This document shows positions 4,723 through 63,801 of a DNA stretch of 64,000 nucleotides, in pieces. Position 1 is the first letter of the stretch. The number at the start of each line of letters is the position of its first letter. The translations under genes were made by a program, and so were the position numbers. Origin of the DNA: Blastocystis sp. Blastoise (taxonomy: Eukaryota > Protista > Bigyra: Opalinata); contig JBBPEB010000003.1 of assembly GCA_039096225.1 (NCBI GenBank), positions 1 through 64,000 on the forward strand, read 5' to 3'. The notes beneath the pieces are model-generated. The model ran no database searches, was not told the origin of the DNA, and worked only from the letters and a program-made list of their open reading frames with translations.

Positions 4723-7013
4723 TTAGTGTTGAACCTTCTTTTCAGTAAGAATTTGAAGGATCTTTTCAGCACAAGTAGGAATACGAGTACCAGGTCCAAA
4801 TACAGCAGAGCAGCCCTTACTAGCAAGGAAATCATAATCACGAGGAGGAATGACACCACCAGCAAAGACAATAATATCTTCACGTCCTTCTTTCTTTAAG
4901 CAATCAATAAGAGCAGGAATGAGAGTCTTATGACCAGCAGCAAGAGATGAACAGCCAATAGCATGAACATCAGCATCAACAGCAGCTCTAGCAGCTTCTT
5001 CAGGTGTTTGGAATAAAGGACCAACATCAACATCAAAACCTAAATCAGCTAAACCAGTAGAAACAACCTTAGCACCTCTATCATGTCCATCTTGACCCAT
5101 CTTAGCAACATAAACACGAGGTCTACGACCAGTCTTATCAGTAAAAGTCTTTACTTCATCAGAAATCTTTTTAAATTCATCTTTTTCATTACTATTAGAG
5201 AATTCTTCTCTATAAGCACCTTGGACCATTTCTTGTCTAGGAGTATGTCTTCCCCATTTAGATTCAAGAGCAGAAGAAACTTCACCAAGAGTACATCTAG
5301 CACGCATAGCATTAATAGATAAATTAAGAAGGTTATTAGGATTATTACCAGCACCAGTAGGTTCAGTAAGAGAAGCACTATTAGAAAGAGCTTCAAGAGC
5401 AAGACGAGCTTTATCTTGATCACGTTCAGCTTTAACTTTATTAATACGAGCAATTTGAGATTCACGAACAGCTTTATTATCAACTTCAAGAAGATCAACA
5501 GGAGCTTCTTTAGCTAATCTATATTTGTTAACACCAACGATAACATCCTTACCAGAATCAATACGAGCTTGTTTTCTAGCAGCAGCTTCTTCAATACGTA
5601 ATTTAGGCATACCAGAAGCAATAGCTTTAGTCATACCACCAAGAGCTTCAACTTCATCAATAATACCTTCAGCACTCTTAATTAATTCATTAGTAAGATA
5701 TTCAATAAGATAAGCACCACCGAAAGGATCTACAGATTTACAAATACCAGTTTCTTCTTGAATAATAAGTTGAGTATTACGAGCAATACGAGCAGAGAAT
5801 TCAGTAGGTAAACCAAGAGCTTCATCAAGAGCATTAGTATGAAGAGATTGAGTACCACCCATAACAGCAGCCATAGCTTCAATAGTAGTACGAATAACAT
5901 TATTATAAGGATCTTGTTCAGTCAGACTATAACCAGAAGTTTGACAGTGAGTACGAAGAAGAAGAGATTTATAATTCTTAGGATGGAATTCTTTTTGAAT
6001 TCTCTTAGCCCAAACTTGTCTAGCAGCACGAAGTTTAGCAACTTCCATATAGAAATTCATACCAATACCCCAGAAGAAAGAAAGACGAGGACAAACAGCA
6101 TCAGGAGAAACACCAGCAGCTTGAGCACAACGAATATATTCAATACCATCAGCAATAGTAAAAGCCATTTCTAATTTAGCATCAGCACCAGCTTCTTGCA
6201 TATGATAACCGGAAATAGAAATAGAATTAAATTTTGGCATATGAACAGAAGTATATCCCATAATATCTTGAATAATACGAAGAGATTCATGAGGAGGATA
6301 AATAAAAGTGTTACGAACCATAAATTCCTTTAAAATATCATTTTGAATAGTACCACGAAGTTTTTCTTGAGAAACACCTTGTTCTTCAGCAGCAATAACA
6401 TAACCAGCAAGAATAGGAAGGACAGCACCATTCATAGTCATAGAAACAGACATCTTATCAAGAGGAATACCATTGAAAAGAATCTTCATATCTTCAACTG
6501 AATCAACAGCAACACCAGCCATACCAACATCACCAGTAACACGAGGATGATCAGAATCATAACCTCTATGAGTAGCTAAATCAAAAGCTACAGATAAACC
6601 TTGTTGACCAGCAGCAAGATTCTTACGATAGAAAGCATTAGAAGCTTCAGCAGTAGAGAAACCAGCATATTGACGAATAGTCCAAGGCTTTTCAGTATAC
6701 ATGGTAGCATAAGGACCACGAGTATAAGGGAAACAACCAGAAGCTTGAGCAATATCAAGATCTTTAATATCATCCTTTGTAAATAAAGGTTTTACACTAA
6801 TACCTTCAGGAGTCTTGAAAATAAGAGATTCTAAAAAAAAAAGATATTGTTAAAAAAGAAATAAAAAGTGTAACAGAATCATAATAAAGACATACCAGGA
6901 CTCTTTCCTTTAAGTTCCTTAGTAGCAAGCTTAGTCCATTCAGCAGGGAATGTAGCAGCAGCAAAGTTACGAGCTAAAGTAGGTTTGAATACAGATTGAG
7001 TGATCTTTAACAT
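4723..7013 (-). CDS. MMUT: Methylmalonyl-CoA mutase, mitochondrial (adenosylcobalamin-dependent)
   Basis: Contains [23 protein letters not shown] and the B12-binding [10 protein letters not shown] motif. Exon 1 encodes a presequence-like [20 protein letters not shown]. There is one CDS intron at 6831-6895. Confidence 0.98.
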
Positions 7014-56043: not shown

Positions 56044-59000
56044 TTAAACACTTGATGGACTAGCATCAGGAGTTGGTACAGGACGTGTGTTTGAAATAGT
56101 ATGTAATTTCTTATTCATTTGAACAAACATAACTGTACCCACAAGAAGTGCAACACCTAATAGACTACCTAAAATACCTATAGTAATAGATTTCCAATCA
56201 TAGGATGATTCATGAGTAACAGTTGATTCATCTAAAGATTGATCAGCTATGAATAAAGTAGAATATCTACTTGTAGAACCTGATAAGAATTGACCCATTT
56301 TTGTAAGCATAGGACTACCATTATTGAAGTCATCATTATCTACAGTCCATACCATACCTCCTTTTAAGCCCATATCTCGAATATATTCCAATTTATAAGT
56401 AATACTATCTAGATTTTCATATCCATACCATTGATCTTGATATTGAACATAAGGAGTCTTTGTATATTCATCAAATCCTTCAACACCACCTTTAGCAATA
56501 ACATCCATCATTTCTAAATAATTAATAACACCATCTTGACCTGTATAAGGCATAGCAGAACTAGCTCCTTTAGCAGCAGATCCCATAGGTTGACCTGAAG
56601 CAGAAGAAGCTAATGTCCATCCACGACCATAAGTAGCCATACCTAAAACAATCATATCTCTTGGCATACCTAATTCAATCCAATAATGAGTAGCAAAATC
56701 AACAGTATAATAATAATCTAAAGTACCTTCAACAGTATCTTTAGGAGGATATAAAGCAGTTGGAGCACCAGTAACATCTTCCCATTGACCATGAAGATCA
56801 TAAGTCATTAAATTAATAAAATCAATTTCAGGAACCATATTCGGAACATCATAAGCTACATCAATCTTATCTTTACCTGCACCTACAGCTACAGTAAGAA
56901 GAAGACGACTCTTACCTGTTCTACTAGCTTCAGCATCAAAAGCTTGACGCATTTCTCTTAATAAACTAATGAAATTAGCTTTATCTTGAGGTCTTCCTCC
57001 CATATCTTCTACACTAGGATACTCCCAATCTAAATCTATACCATCAAATTCATGAGTACGTAACCAAGAGATAGCAGAATTAATAAAAGCTGCACGATTC
57101 ACAGGAGTCTCGACCATTGTAGTAAATATATGCTTAAATTGTTCATATAAATTAAAATTCCATCCACCAAAAGCCAGTAAAGTCTTACAATTAGGATTTG
57201 TTTGTCGTACTCTCTTATTAAAACGAGCATATAAACCATTAGCAGGATTCCAATCAACAATATCATTCCATTCAACAACTTCAACATTAAATGTTTTAGC
57301 ATTAATATAAGCAAAACCATAAATCATATGAGTAAAGTATTTGGCATCTATTTGTTCAGGCATAAATTTACCTTTATCTGAACGATATTGAGCCCAGTTA
57401 GTAAAGTATCCTACAAAATATTTTGGACCTGAAGGTGCAGTAGTAGGTGCAGTAGTAGGTGCAGTAGTTGGTTTGGTTGTAGGTGCAGTAGTTGGCTTGG
57501 TTGTAGGAGCAGTAGTAGGAGCAGTAGTAGGTGCAGTAGTTGGCTTGGTTGTAGGAGCAGTAGTAGGAGCAGTTGTTGGAGCAACAGTTGGTTTGGTTGT
57601 AGGAGCAGTAGTAGGTTTGGTTGTAGGTGCAACAGTAGGTGCAGTAGTAGGTTTGGTTGTAGGTGCAGTAGTAGGTTTGGTTGTAGGTGCAGTTGTTGGT
57701 GTAGTAGTAGGTGCAACAGTAGGAGCAACAGTTGGTTCAACAGTAGGACATTCACCACAGTCTTGAGGACAGTTTGAGCATGATTCTCCTTCTTGGCAAA
57801 TACCATCACCACAGAAATTAGGTAAATCTTGATCACAAGAAATATTCTTACATAGATCATCATTATCAGCAACTAGAGTTCCTTGATAACAAATAGAACC
57901 AGGAGCTGTAGAATATAATCCATATCGAATACCAAGAACGCATTGTTGGAAGGATCCACAACAATTATGAGGATAACATATAAATCCAATATCTGTAGGA
58001 CCACATGTTCCTGATGGAGTAGGAGCAACAGTAGGTTTGGTTGTAGGAGCAACAGTAGGTGCAGTAGTAGGAGCAGTTGTTGGCTTAACAGTAGGTGCAG
58101 TAGTAGGTGCAGTTGTTGGCTTAACAGTAGGTGCAGTAGTAGGAGCAGTTGTTGGCTTAACAGTAGGTGCAGTAGTAGGAGCAGTTGTTGGCTTAACAGT
58201 AGGTGCAGTAGTAGGTGCAGTTGTTGGCTTAACAGTAGGTGCAGTTGTTGGTTGAGTAGTAGGTGCAACAGTAGGAGCAGTAGTTGGTTTAGTAGTAGGT
58301 GCAGTAGTAGGACATTCACCACAATCTTCAGGACAAGATGAGCATGATTCATAGATAGCACAAACACCATCACCACATGTCTTTTGAGAGGATGGACATT
58401 GGACATTAGCACATCGAGAATCACTAGCTAATACTTGTGCACCATCATAACATAATGTTCCAGGAGCTACACCTTGAACAGGGAATAAGAATCCATTACT
58501 ACATGTATAATACTTATCACAACAATTATCTGGATAACAATATATTCCACTAGGTTTGTTAGAACAAGAAGGAGTAATTTCAATATCAGAATCACATTTA
58601 CAATCATTAGGACAATTTGAACATGTTTCACCAACTTCACATATACCATTACCACATACAGATGGAGCAGTAGTAGGAGCAGTAGTAGGAGCAACAGTTG
58701 GTGTAGTAGTTGGCTTTGTTGTAGGAGCAGCTGTAGGAGTAGTAGTTGGCTTAGTAGTAGGAGCAGTTGTAGGAGTAGTAGTTGGCTTTGTTGTAGGAGT
58801 AGTTGTAGGAGTAGTAGTTGGCTTTGTTGTAGGAGTAGTTGTAGGAGCAGTAGTTGGCTTAGTAGTAGGAGTAGTAGTAGGCTCATAATCAAGAGTATTA
58901 GCTAAAGATCCATAGGGAGCAAGATAAGGTGTATATGCATTATTAGGTTTAGTTTCCCAACTATGAGGTTCATCAGCTATTTGATTATTAAATGACCAAC

Positions 59001-61281
59001 GTACAATGGATCTATAAATATTAAAATATATATATAATGAAAATAGTAACAAAAAATATATATATATATAAACATACTCCATAGTAGGTCCATAGAATGT
59101 TTCTTTTTCAGGTAAATATGCACGAATAGAAGCAAGCATAAGTCTCCAATCATATCGGAAGGAAATACCTGTAGCAGATGGATTCTTTGATTTTCTATGT
59201 GTAAGAATTTTATTATAAACAAGAGATGCTTGAGATTGAATAAGTGTCCAATCAATCTTCCCATGAATATGTTCAACTTCTTCATAAGGATATGATTCTT
59301 TCAGTTTATTAATAAACCAAAGTGTGTTCGTCCAAGAAATAGAGAAATCATAAAGATTAGTAGCTTTACTACAGGATAAACAAGCGTTATTAATATCTGT
59401 ACTATGACCACCATATCCATCTAATTTACAGTCAGAAATAGGATTCTTATCAGCGGTACAACCCTCTACATTCATATTTCCAAATAAACCACGGTTATAA
59501 GTATACATAGCTGCAGCGAATTCCATAGCATCTTCAGCATCTTCATCTCCTTGACGAAGATCCCATGCAGGACGCATTCCCTATATATATAGATATGTAT
59601 ATTTATAAAATGAAAAATAATAAATAATAATACATATTAAGAGAATAATATATATATATATAACAAAGTTACATGTAAAAATATATAAATCATAAATATA
59701 ATATAAATATAATATAAATATAATATAAATATAATATAAATATAATATAAATATAATATAAATATAATATAAATATAATTATATGTAATATAAATATAAT
59801 ATAAATATAATATAAATATAATTATATGTAATATAAATATAATATAAATATAATATAAATATAATATAAATATAATCATATGTAATATAAATATAATCAT
59901 ATGTAATATAAATATAATAAAAAATATAATATAAATAAAATAAACATAATATATACTTGTTTAGGAAGACGCATAATAACATTATGTCTGAAATGAAGGT
60001 CAAGAGAAGATAATACAATAGCTAAATATAAATCACCAGTGACAGAGTCATGATATTCACGGAACTTATTATAATTAATTAAAAATTCATTATCTGAAAT
60101 AAATCTATATATTATAAAAATTAGAATATATATACATATATCAACATAAAGAACAACTTACGAAGGTTTTCTTTCAGAAATAGGAATAGAAGAATTTCCA
60201 GTAAAGAAACGATGAGGAATGACAGAAACATCAGTAGACATAGCAGGAGTTTCGACTTGGAAAGGACCATCCTTATTATTATCGACAAATAAACCATCAT
60301 TTCGTAATGTATTTAAGAATTCATCATCACCATCAACAATAAAATAACTATTATCTTTTTCTTTATAAAGAGCAGTAGCAAAGGTTTCTTTAGCAGCTAA
60401 ACCCATCATAGCATTTGGATTAATACCATATTGATCTTGACCATAAGCGAGGAACATACCAAAATATTTATCAGGAAGACGAATAATAACGGGAGTATTA
60501 CTGACTGTAATGACATTATCAGGTCTACCAATGAACATTTGAGTATATTGATTTCTAAAATCAGAATGGAAACCACAAACATCTTTAGTAGTTGGTTTGT
60601 ATACAGAAGAATCATCATATCCAGGAGAATTCATAATAGTAGTCACTTGATCAAGTAATTGATCACGAGATAAAGTCAATGCATAACTATAGGATATATA
60701 TTGATAGAAAATGAATACAAAAATTATATTTTAATCATTTTTTAATAAAAAAAATATAAATATAAATGTGAAAAATAATTCGAAACAAAAAGAGTAAAAT
60801 TTCTAACTAAAAAAATTAAACAAATTAAAAAATATATTTACGGTCCATGTTGAGTATGGTTAAAAACATAATTTGTTGTAGCATCGCCACCAGATCCATT
60901 AGTATTATCATCAGTACTTGTATCTCCACCAGGTACACCCCAAGGCCATTCAGGATCTTCAGTAGGACAATTTGTTGTTGAAGGACATTCCCAACTATGA
61001 ACAATAGTGCCAGCTTTACATTTAGTACCAGAAGGAAGTTCCTATAAAAGATATTTAATAGATCAGAAGTTCAATGATAGATAATATGATGAATATGAAG
61101 TGAAATATACTTGAGGTTTATGTAAATATCCATTCTCACATTGAACAAATTTTGAACAACAATCGATAGGATAACAAATAACTCCAGAAAAGCCAGATTT
61201 ACATTGATCTCTGTTGTCTGTGCTTTCTGCATAAACAAAGGTAAGGAACAATAGAACGATTTCAATAATATTAACTTTCAT
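56044..61281 (-). CDS. Secreted, C-terminally membrane-anchored multidomain chitinase: CBM14-like modules, lysozyme-fold domain, PT repeats, GH18 domain
   Basis: Signal peptide MKVNIIEIVLLFLTFVYA; GH18 FVGYFTNWAQYR...FDGIDLDWEYP...LMTYDLHG...GGMVWTVDNDD; three CYPxxCC modules; three CG(N/D)G(I/V)C...CPxDC repeats; TM ITIGILGSLLGVALLVGTVMFV. Five introns. Confidence 0.92.
57430..58885 (-). repeat. Three coding Pro/Thr (PTT[A/K/T]) mucin-like repeat tracts in the chitinase
   Basis: 12-bp-based repeats at about 57430-57745, 58020-58310 and 58663-58885. Confidence 0.95.

Positions 61282-62006: not shown

Positions 62007-63801
<1,795 letters not shown>

What the first reader, a model, noticed from the sequence alone, without database searches (positions are those of the whole stretch)
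56044..61281. Surface-tethered dual-catalytic glycan hydrolase: unannotated lysozyme/SLT-fold domain fused to a GH18 chitinase
Seen: one spliced ORF runs signal peptide, Cys module, a roughly 390-aa globular domain (about 60686-59077), PT stalks with Cys modules, an intact GH18 domain (DGIDLDWE), a TM helix and a short tail. The globular domain has three motifs in the order diagnostic of the lysozyme-like superfamily (SLT/GH23/GH124): YGINPNAMMGLAAKET (helix ending in the catalytic Glu, like the ES motif), DGPFQVE (like GLMQ) and AAAMYTYNRG (like AYNAG). Known: that fold cleaves beta-1,4 bonds in peptidoglycan, chitin or cellulose and is mainly bacterial or phage. Inference: a possibly horizontally acquired domain, now carrying introns, forming a two-headed cell-surface enzyme for digesting chitin and/or bacterial walls, or for remodelling a cyst wall. 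It may represent an unclassified GH family.
Basis: partly seen in the sequence, partly recalled or inferred. Interest (0 to 1): 0.8.

Follow-up and report, generated by a model that had tools for sequence, protein, structure and literature searches.

The report
Blastocystis two-headed membrane-anchored chitinase
A gut protist (very likely a tortoise Blastocystis) has one membrane-anchored gene that joins an ordinary GH18 chitinase to a second, lysozyme-shaped domain of the rare ChiD/Jessie-3 family, which suggests that the Entamoeba cyst-wall "lectin" Jessie-3 and chitinase work as one chitin-remodelling machine.

Summary
A six-exon minus-strand gene (61281-56044) encodes signal peptide, an 8-Cys module, a ~430-aa globular domain, three PT stalks with Cys modules, an intact GH18 domain, a TM helix and a short tail.

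The globular domain is not an orphan. It is homologous over its whole length to the catalytic region of the archaeal chitinase Tc-ChiD (PDB 5XSV; profile E 9.8e-78). It is also homologous to the C-terminal "daub" domain of Entamoeba Jessie-3. All four proposed ChiD catalytic residues are kept: Glu in AAKET, Asp and Glu in DGPFQVE, His in GYGGH.

A model of an orthologue's domain (pLDDT 87) matches 5XSV at Z 36.

The fusion is real. Two Blastocystis-like orthologues encode nearly all (L002) or all (L004) of the protein in one open reading frame.

It is the only ChiD-like locus and the only GH18 locus found in this 33.3-Mb genome. Bacterial relatives also pair GH18 with this domain.

The family, its ChiD link and its presence in Blastocystis are published (2021, 2026). 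I did not find the conserved fusion to GH18 discussed. Catalysis by this domain and the origin by gene transfer remain untested.

The parts
61111..61281 (-). Exon 1: start codon, signal peptide, first half of the N-terminal 8-Cys module
   Evidence: The orthologue L002 has the same exon end (…PPQ|GT), followed by a 29-nt intron.
60842..61041 (-). Exon 2: second half of the 8-Cys module and a Gly/Asp/Thr-rich linker
   Evidence: It is collinear with P0002 and P0003.
60162..60686 (-). Exon 3: first part of the ChiD/Jessie-3-type lysozyme-fold domain. It carries Glu (60386-60388), Asp (60269-60271) and Glu (60251-60253).
   Evidence: Matches 5xsv_A at E 1.3e-7. The residues align to ChiD Glu532, Asp566 and Glu572 (numbering from PMC8136499).
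59957..60104 (-). Exon 4: middle helices of the domain
   Evidence: Matches P0002 301-349 and P0003 236-284.
59078..59580 (-). Exon 5: YNRG motif (59488-59499), His (59404-59406) and the C-terminal helical part of the domain
   Evidence: Matches 5xsv_A collinearly at E 0.17, with the His aligned to ChiD His693. It is 62-64% identical to P0001-P0003.
58885..59011 (-). Start of exon 6: last ~40 residues of the globular domain
   Evidence: The model of the orthologue is ordered up to about residue 410 of 451. Alignment.
57430..58884 (-). Three Pro/Thr stalks (58657-58884, 58012-58308, 57430-57744). They separate two Cys-rich blocks: 58312-58659 (6-Cys mini-module, 8-Cys module, mini-module) and 57745-58011 (8-Cys module, mini-module).
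   Evidence: Pfam PT repeat. Coordinates. One 8-Cys module gives a sub-threshold CBM_14 match, E 0.0049.
56332..57417 (-). GH18 chitinase domain with DGIDLDWE intact (57022-57045)
   Evidence: Pfam PF00704 at 2.8e-85. Closest solved structures are insect chitinase and human chitotriosidase, E 1e-84 to 1e-86. It is the only GH18 locus found in the genome.
56044..56331 (-). Ser-rich juxtamembrane stretch, TM helix (56122-56190), ~25-residue tail starting with Lys-Lys, and stop codon
   Evidence: Sequence. Orthologues end the same way.

Best explanation
This is one gene of a tortoise-clade Blastocystis, and the genome fits strain Rus-B. It encodes a type I membrane glycoprotein with two chitin-directed heads.

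The membrane-proximal head is a canonical GH18 chitinase. The distal head is a Jessie-3-like unit: an 8-Cys module followed by a ChiD-family domain. That domain has a GH23-like lysozyme core with an extra helical subdomain and keeps the Glu/Asp/Glu/His set proposed as catalytic in Tc-ChiD. Long, probably O-glycosylated Pro/Thr stalks and further Cys modules space the two heads.

Shown here: the gene model, family membership, the fold, conservation of the catalytic residues, conservation of the fusion across Blastocystis-like lineages, and single-copy status.

Inferred: both heads hydrolyse beta-1,4-GlcNAc polymers. The protein trims and compacts the organism's own chitin in the cyst wall or surface coat from the plasma membrane outward. 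This combines in one polypeptide the jobs that Entamoeba divides between chitinase and Jessie-3.
For: Homology to ChiD:
- Exon 3 alone matches 5xsv_A at E 1.3e-7, and exon 5 matches it collinearly.
- A family profile matches 5xsv_A at E 9.8e-78 over chain residues 39-479, and matches no other PDB sequence.

Catalytic residues:
- The four residues named in PMC8136499 are present in the window.
- They are kept in 20 of 25 homologues. 57 columns are invariant among the 11 closest sequences, including E111, D150, E156, YNRG 263-266 and H294.

Fold:
- Model of the orthologue's domain: pLDDT 87.4, pTM 0.89.
- Foldseek finds 5xsv at E 8.6e-14.
- VIA-align gives Z 36 to 5xsv, then GH23-type enzymes at Z 8-10.

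Fusion:
- P0002 and P0003 carry the same architecture in continuous ORFs.
- L002 has only a 29-nt intron, at the position of the window's intron 1. L004 has none.

Genome context:
- One ChiD-like locus and one GH18 locus were found in the genome.
- A chitin-synthase-type exon was also found.

Chitin context of the family:
- Bacterial-type relatives carry CBM5/12, CBM2, CBM49 and GH18 in the same protein.

Literature:
- Blastocystis encodes chitin synthase and GH18 chitinases, and its coat is reported to contain chitin (PMC5608401).
- In Entamoeba, Jessie-3 and chitinase appear together, traffic alike and co-localise (PMC12944779).

Organism:
- The genome is 33,340,088 bases in 34 contigs at about 22% GC.
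- Rus-B is listed with 33 scaffolds, 33.3 Mb and 23.1% GC (PMC12129017).
Against: - No activity was measured for this protein.
- Recombinant Entamoeba Jessie-3 and its C-terminal domain showed no chitinase or deacetylase activity. The C-terminal domain did not bind chitin (PMC2698119).
- The Blastocystis domain lacks the N-terminal beta-sandwich subdomain of ChiD (one search aligns only chain residues 421-804). That subdomain is said to extend the chitin-binding site (PMC12022489).
- The structure was modelled on an orthologue whose domain is 64-67% identical to window exons 3-5, not on the window protein itself.
- No expression or localisation data were available for this strain.
- The chitin-synthase evidence in this genome is a single exon match.
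Confidence: 0.6

Rival explanations
1. The distal domain is a non-enzymatic, self-aggregating 'daub' module, as proposed for Entamoeba Jessie-3. It would seal or cross-link the wall, and only the GH18 head would be catalytic.
For: Jessie-3 and its C-terminal domain self-aggregated and showed no chitinase activity (PMC2698119). Some family members (P0029, P0031, P0033, P0039, P0043) have lost the catalytic residues, so non-catalytic uses exist.
Against: The Glu/Asp/Glu/His set is strictly kept in Blastocystis-like, Archamoeba and bacterial members, which is hard to explain without catalysis. The authors of PMC2698119 themselves allow for misfolding or an untested activity. A membrane-tethered protein is an odd mortar.
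Confidence: 0.2
2. The distal domain is a muramidase or lytic transglycosylase aimed at the peptidoglycan of gut bacteria, for defence or feeding, rather than at chitin.
For: The nearest folds after ChiD are peptidoglycan lytic transglycosylases and g-type lysozymes. The Jessie-3 domain expressed in the E. coli periplasm often disrupted the outer membrane and clumped cells (PMC2698119).
Against: The one characterised member is a chitinase. Relatives carry chitin- or cellulose-binding modules and GH18, and none of those scanned carries a peptidoglycan-binding module. No sequence-level match to SLT was found.
Confidence: 0.1
3. Both heads are active chitinases, but the target is foreign chitin in the tortoise gut (fungi, arthropod fragments), for nutrition or competition, not the organism's own wall.
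For: The GH18 head is closest to animal digestive or defensive chitinases. Tortoise isolates have acquired other glycan-degrading enzymes (PMC12129017). The long stalks would project the distal head beyond the coat.
Against: The same gene is conserved in orthologues whose GC content resembles human subtypes. The closest eukaryotic relatives are cyst-wall proteins of Archamoebae. Membrane tethering suits action on a cell's own surface.
Confidence: 0.15
4. The 5' exons belong to a separate gene, and the fusion is an artefact of the gene model.
For: There is no transcript evidence for this strain. The 376-nt intron 4 is filled with AT-only repeats.
Against: Exon 5, which carries the catalytic His, and GH18 lie on one 1177-aa ORF. 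Exons 3-5 abut without gaps on continuous orthologous proteins. L004 encodes the whole protein from signal peptide to TM helix in one ORF.
Confidence: 0.02

Closest known systems
Tc-ChiD, chitinase of Thermococcus chitonophagus (PDB 5XSV/5XSW/5XSX; Horiuchi 2016 and Nishitani 2018, known to me only through citing papers)
   Same: Homologous across the helical catalytic region (E 9.8e-78, Z 36). The same four proposed catalytic residues and the YNRG motif are present.
   Different: The window protein has no beta-sandwich subdomain. It is eukaryotic and carries introns. Its accessory modules are different Cys-rich modules. It is fused to GH18 and to a TM anchor.
Entamoeba Jessie-3 cyst-wall lectin (e.g. 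E. invadens XP_004183669.1 = P0062) and Mastigamoeba MbJessie-C
   Same: The order is the same: signal peptide, 8-Cys module, spacer, then the same domain (about 43-47% identity). MbJessie-C also has a C-terminal TM domain (PMC8136499).
   Different: Jessie-3 has no GH18 domain. Its 8-Cys chitin-binding domain has a different Cys pattern. The function described for it is self-aggregation, not catalysis.
Entamoeba and Mastigamoeba GH18 chitinases (Cys-rich chitin-binding domain, low-complexity spacer, GH18; some with a TM domain)
   Same: The C-terminal two thirds of the window protein have the same logic: Cys module, repetitive spacer, GH18, TM helix.
   Different: Here the chitinase carries a whole Jessie-3-like unit at its N-terminus.
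Bacterial-type multidomain proteins with GH18, CBMs and a C-terminal ChiD-like domain (Vallitalea okinawensis WP_105616692.1 = P0040; also P0041, P0045, P0061)
   Same: The same two catalytic domain types sit in one chain, together with chitin- or cellulose-binding modules.
   Different: The domain order is reversed, with GH18 first. The CBMs are bacterial and there is no TM anchor. They fall on a different branch of the tree, so the fusions are probably independent.
GH23 lytic transglycosylases, g-type lysozymes and the Ralstonia GH23 chitinase (3W6B)
   Same: The lysozyme-like core fold is shared (Z 7.8-10.3).
   Different: There is no detectable sequence similarity: no Pfam SLT match and hhalign probability 0.8%. 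The window domain has an extra helical subdomain and additional Asp/Glu/His residues.

Membership tests
ChiD / Jessie-3 'daub' domain family | Sequence homology over the whole helical catalytic region of Tc-ChiD | tested here: met
   (exons 3 and 5 searched alone). (profile E 9.8e-78, no other PDB hit).
ChiD / Jessie-3 'daub' domain family | Proposed catalytic residues Glu532, Asp566, Glu572 and His693 | tested here: met
   All four align to identical residues in the window. The numbering comes from PMC8136499.
ChiD / Jessie-3 'daub' domain family | Three-dimensional fold of 5XSV | tested here: met
   Tested on the orthologue's domain (64-67% identical to window exons 3-5): Z 36.0, rmsd 3.0 over 349 residues. 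The window's own spliced domain was not folded.
ChiD / Jessie-3 'daub' domain family | N-terminal beta-sandwich subdomain of ChiD | tested here: not met
   The structural match covers only chain residues 421-804. The window has only a ~40-residue linker between the Cys module and the domain. Jessie-3 proteins also have only a low-complexity spacer here.
ChiD / Jessie-3 'daub' domain family | Chitinase activity | not testable with these tools
   This needs an enzyme assay. Recombinant Jessie-3 was negative (PMC2698119).
Entamoeba Jessie-3 lectin (whole protein) | Secreted protein made only of an 8-Cys chitin-binding domain plus the daub domain | tested here: not met
   The window protein continues into PT stalks, GH18 and a TM helix.
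Entamoeba Jessie-3 lectin (whole protein) | Entamoeba-type 8-Cys chitin-binding domain | tested here: inconclusive
   Eight Cys are present, but the spacing differs from P0062 and P0008. One internal module gives a sub-threshold CBM_14 match, E 0.0049, 17.4 bits against a cut-off of 22.1.
GH23 / SLT (Pfam PF01464) | Match to the SLT sequence profile | tested here: not met
   No Pfam hit on any of exons 1-5 at E<=1. hhalign of A2 against an SLT alignment gives probability 0.8%.
GH23 / SLT (Pfam PF01464) | Lysozyme-like core fold with the catalytic Glu at the end of a helix | tested here: met
   Z 8-10 to MltC, MltE, Slt70, MltF and g-type lysozyme. Glu111 is at the C-terminal end of helix 101-112. 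The only hhalign alignment places this Glu on the SLT ES Glu, but it is not significant.
GH23 / SLT (Pfam PF01464) | GLMQ and AYNAG motifs equivalent to DGPFQVE and YNRG | tested here: inconclusive
   Both motifs are invariant within the family. No residue-level superposition on a GH23 structure could be obtained.
GH18 chitinase | Pfam PF00704 above its cut-off and the DxxDxDxE catalytic motif | tested here: met
   287 bits against a cut-off of 29.6. DGIDLDWE lies at 57022-57045.

The most novel reading that the evidence does not exclude
The fusion works as a 'Rosetta stone'. Under this reading, the Jessie-3 daub domain of Entamoeba cyst walls is a latent lysozyme-fold chitinase that works obligatorily with GH18 chitinase. 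The pairing would have arisen independently in bacteria (GH18, CBM, ChiD-like) and in Blastocystis (ChiD-like, GH18). The domain would have spread among unrelated anaerobic gut protists (Archamoebae, Blastocystis) and an aphelid by lateral transfer. That would revise the 'wattle and daub' model and give a shared cyst-wall drug target.
Probability: 0.35. Interest if true: 0.6.

Novelty: new variant of a known kind. Interest (0 to 1): 0.45.

Why it matters
Cysts are the transmissible stage of Blastocystis, and their wall chemistry is poorly known. This gene is the only GH18 locus and the only ChiD-like locus that six-frame searches found in the genome, so it is the obvious handle on chitin turnover in this organism.

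The physical fusion of a Jessie-3-like unit with chitinase is conserved across Blastocystis-like lineages with 22-52% GC. The same domain pairing recurs in bacteria. This is independent genomic support for the recent observation that Jessie-3 and chitinase behave as a functional pair in Entamoeba. It also argues that the daub domain should be re-tested as an enzyme.

It adds a eukaryotic, intron-bearing member to a very small glycosidase family: 49 clusters among 1.84 billion representative proteins.

Tried and rejected
- Pfam on exons 1-5 taken singly found nothing at E<=1 except one chance zinc-finger hit on exon 2 at E 0.42.
- An exact look-up of the 1177-aa ORF in public assemblies found nothing.
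- The primary ChiD paper (PMC4959179) is not held. What I say about ChiD biochemistry therefore rests on citing papers and on PDB titles. I could not establish whether CAZy has given the family a GH number.
- The search for related loci with alignment A1 failed because no stretch was conserved enough. With A2 it found a single Pseudomonadota MAG among the GTDB representatives. This is a lower bound from two strict peptide patterns, not a distribution.
- Profile-profile comparison with an SLT alignment built from that MAG (A3) was not significant.
- The tree could not name a donor (30 rows). Near-identical cluster members were dropped. The key branch has 89/87 support, and most rows are unnamed metagenome proteins.
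- The separate-genes reading was rejected (see rivals).
- A Dictyostelium origin was my first guess, from the AT-richness and PT repeats. I dropped it after the genome statistics and the Blastocystis-type 29-nt intron and TGTTGTT motif in the orthologues.
- Joined-exon step: I did concatenate the exons once in a local script to check the frame. The result was 1504 codons with no internal stop, and one BLASTP segment over residues 22-807 against P0002 residues 11-774. The files were deleted, and the joined sequence was sent to no search or folding tool. All searches were done exon by exon by reference. Searching or folding the joined model was left out.
Full report
**Observation**

The window is AT-rich, about 20-30% GC. 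It rises to 32-36% over the gene.

Reading the minus strand between 61400 and 58900 gives a clean six-exon model with GT...AG introns:
- E1 61281-61111
- E2 61041-60842
- E3 60686-60162
- E4 60104-59957
- E5 59580-59078
- E6 59011-56044

Intron 5 is 66 nt and in frame. The mechanical ORF 56044..59577 (1177 aa) therefore already links the last third of the globular domain to everything downstream.

Pfam sees only GH18 (2.8e-85) and PT repeats. It finds nothing on exons 1-5 apart from one chance hit at E 0.42. The globular domain ends about 40 residues into exon 6 rather than at 59077.

**What the globular domain is**

Exon 3 alone, searched by reference against PDB sequences, hits one thing. 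That is 5xsv_A, the archaeal chitinase of Thermococcus chitonophagus (ChiD), at E 1.3e-7. Exon 5 hits the same chain further along, at E 0.17.

A paper on the Mastigamoeba genome (PMC8136499) states two things:
- The C-terminal domain specific to Entamoeba Jessie-3 cyst-wall lectins corresponds to this ChiD catalytic domain.
- The proposed catalytic residues are Glu532, Asp566, Glu572 and His693.

Counting along the HMMER alignments places these at chain positions 213, 247, 253 and 374. They align with the Glu of AAKET, the Asp and Glu of DGPFQVE, and the His of GYGGH in the window.

**Relatives**

An exhaustive HMMER search with exon 3 found only 49 clusters at E<=1e-3 among 1.84 billion representative proteins. 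The family is rare.

Named members are:
- Pelomyxa schiedti KAH3731474.1
- Entamoeba marina and E. invadens 'chitin binding lectin' (Jessie-3 type)
- a Deltaproteobacteria MAG protein
- Vallitalea okinawensis WP_105616692.1

Exons 3, 4 and 5 match the same homologues collinearly.

In a 29-row alignment, the Glu/Asp/Glu set is kept in 20 of 25 homologues. The His is kept in every one of those 20 whose sequence reaches that region, except two that have Tyr. Five divergent members have lost the residues.

Among the 11 closest sequences, 57 columns are invariant. A profile of the family hits 5xsv_A at E 9.8e-78 over chain residues 39-479 and hits no other PDB sequence.

**Fold**

The spliced window protein may not be joined for the tools. 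I therefore folded the equivalent domain of the orthologue P0003 by reference (L002:607-1959), with the family alignment as its MSA. This domain is 64-67% identical to window exons 3-5.

The model is confident: pLDDT 87.4, pTM 0.89.
- Foldseek finds 5xsv at E 8.6e-14, and only weak g-type lysozyme and MltE matches below it.
- The all-against-representatives VIA-align search gives 5xsv Z 36.0 (349 residues, rmsd 3.0).
- Below that comes a long, nearly uninterrupted run of lysozyme-superfamily enzymes: MltC 10.3, MltE 9.2, Slt 9.0 and 8.5, MltF 8.5, g-type lysozyme 8.4, Tse3 8.2, the Ralstonia GH23 chitinase 7.8, phage lysins about 7, and GH124 6.0.

The tool warns that Z under 8 is common. Here, however, the matches are functionally coherent and cover one contiguous core (model residues ~42-312).

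A profile-profile comparison with an SLT alignment gave a single alignment, and it was not significant (probability 0.8%). It happens to place this Glu on the SLT 'ES' Glu. The fold claim is therefore supported. The motif-by-motif equivalence for GLMQ and AYNAG is not shown.

The match to 5xsv covers chain residues 421-804 only. The beta-sandwich subdomain of ChiD is absent here.

**Is the fusion real?**

A word-based search with the exon-5 region found three proteins 62-64% identical that also carry GH18. P0002 (1223 aa) and P0003 (1213 aa) show the same order of parts in continuous ORFs: Cys module, ChiD-like domain, PT or extensin-like linkers, Cys modules, GH18, TM helix.

Their contigs were fetched.
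- L002 has 51.5% GC. It has one 29-nt intron at exactly the position of the window's intron 1 and is otherwise one ORF.
- L004 has 45.8% GC. It encodes the whole protein, from signal peptide to tail, without interruption. A TGTTGTT-type motif follows the stop codon.

According to PMC12129017, ~30-nt introns and that motif are Blastocystis hallmarks. The two GC values resemble ST3 and ST7 in that paper's Table 1. The fusion is therefore conserved across deep Blastocystis-like lineages and does not depend on my splice model.

**Organism**

The assembly has 33,340,088 bases in 34 contigs at about 22% GC, and the window's contig is 1.33 Mb. Table 1 of PMC12129017 lists Blastocystis sp. Rus-B (Russian tortoise) with 33 scaffolds, 33.3 Mb, N50 1323 kb and 23.1% GC. 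Earlier notes of this scan reached the same identification. I take it as very likely.

**Context in the genome and in the literature**

Six-frame searches of the whole assembly find one ChiD-like locus and one GH18 locus, both in this gene. They also find one exon with a chitin-synthase signature above Pfam's cut-off.

Relevant published statements:
- PMC5608401 reports that Blastocystis ST1, ST4 and ST7 encode chitin synthase and GH18 chitinases, and that the coat is reported to contain chitin.
- PMC12944779 (2026) notes, in one sentence and a supplementary figure, that the Jessie-3 daub domain is conserved in hypothetical proteins of Pelomyxa, Blastocystis sp. (KAK8816815.1, residues 120-586) and Amoeboaphelidium. 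It says their role is unclear.
- The same paper shows that Jessie-3 and chitinase appear together, traffic alike and co-localise, and that a chitinase inhibitor disturbs Jessie-3 placement.
- PMC2698119 found that recombinant Jessie-3 and its C-terminal domain had no chitinase or deacetylase activity, that the C-terminal domain did not bind chitin, and that both self-aggregated.

**Architecture of other family members**

Several bacterial-type relatives combine GH18, chitin- or cellulose-binding modules (CBM5/12, CBM2, CBM49) and a C-terminal ChiD-like domain in one chain. These are P0040, P0041, P0045 and P0061. Pairing the two catalytic domain types is therefore recurrent. The reversed order in Blastocystis suggests an independent fusion.

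**Phylogeny**

A maximum-likelihood tree of 30 domain sequences was built. The window was left out because its exons were not joined, and near-identical cluster members were dropped.

The Blastocystis-like pair falls on the side of the tree that holds Pelomyxa, Entamoeba and several unnamed metagenome sequences (support 89/87). The named bacteria lie on the other side. The pair is not nested inside Archamoebae, and no donor can be named. Lateral transfer is plausible given the patchy distribution, but it is not shown.

**Mechanism proposed**

The protein is anchored by its C-terminal helix, with the GH18 head next to the membrane. Three Pro/Thr stalks of 76-105 residues hold out the Cys modules and, at the tip, the Jessie-3-like unit. 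One Cys module is weakly CBM14-like.

I infer that both heads cut chitin. GH18 is a retaining enzyme, a family property stated from my own knowledge. The ChiD-type head would use the Glu/Asp/Glu/His site of a lysozyme-like cleft. Together they would trim and compact nascent chitin of the cyst wall or coat.

The rival readings are:
- a non-catalytic 'daub' role;
- a peptidoglycan target;
- foreign chitin as the substrate.

They are set out in the Rival explanations section, with the experiments that would separate them.

**Verdict**

The domain is not a new family. It belongs to the ChiD/Jessie-3 family, whose fold, link to Jessie-3 and presence in Blastocystis are already published.

I did not find the following discussed in the held library:
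- the conserved single-gene fusion with GH18 plus a membrane anchor in Blastocystis;
- the parallel GH18 and ChiD-like fusions in bacteria;
- the explicit structural placement of the eukaryotic domain among GH23-like enzymes.

Interest is moderate.

**Procedural note**

In one search I concatenated the exons once in a local script to check frame and collinearity. The files were deleted, and the joined sequence was given to no search or folding tool. Searching or folding the joined model was left out.

Noticed in passing
window 59640-59956 (intron 4): The 376-nt intron 4 is almost entirely an AT-only tandem repeat of ~10-11-nt units (TATATTTATAT-type). It is far longer than the other introns of the gene, which are 57-155 nt.
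   Followed up: no
P0040, P0041, P0045, P0061 (database proteins): Bacterial-type proteins carry GH18 (one has two GH18 stretches), CBM2, CBM5/12 or CBM49, and a C-terminal ChiD-like domain in one chain. This is a recurrent dual-catalytic chitinase design that I did not find described.
   Followed up: partly
P0029, P0031, P0033, P0039, P0043 (database proteins): A divergent subset of the family has lost the Glu/Asp/Glu/His residues. These are possible pseudo-enzymes or binding proteins. The P0043 cluster has 17 members of up to 1437 aa.
   Followed up: no
G000:C18:121298-121435 (L005:5314-5607): A single exon matches Pfam Chitin_synth_2 above its cut-off (36.5-37.9 bits). The rest of the presumed chitin synthase gene was not delimited.
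   Followed up: partly
window 4723-6702 (-): A 659-aa ORF encodes methylmalonyl-CoA mutase with its B12-binding domain (E 1.6e-210).
   Followed up: no
window 62473-62826 (+): An ORF runs into roughly 100 consecutive Ile codons (an ATT/ATA microsatellite) just upstream of the chitinase promoter region.
   Followed up: no
L002:4385-5632: In the ~52% GC orthologous contig, the chitinase is followed by a fragmented ADH_N / ADH_zinc_N gene. This may be a remnant of synteny.
   Followed up: no
L004:3932-4021: A TGTTGTTGTTGT run follows the stop codon of the ~46% GC orthologue. It resembles the Blastocystis 'downstream gene element' (TGTTGTT core) described in PMC12129017.
   Followed up: no
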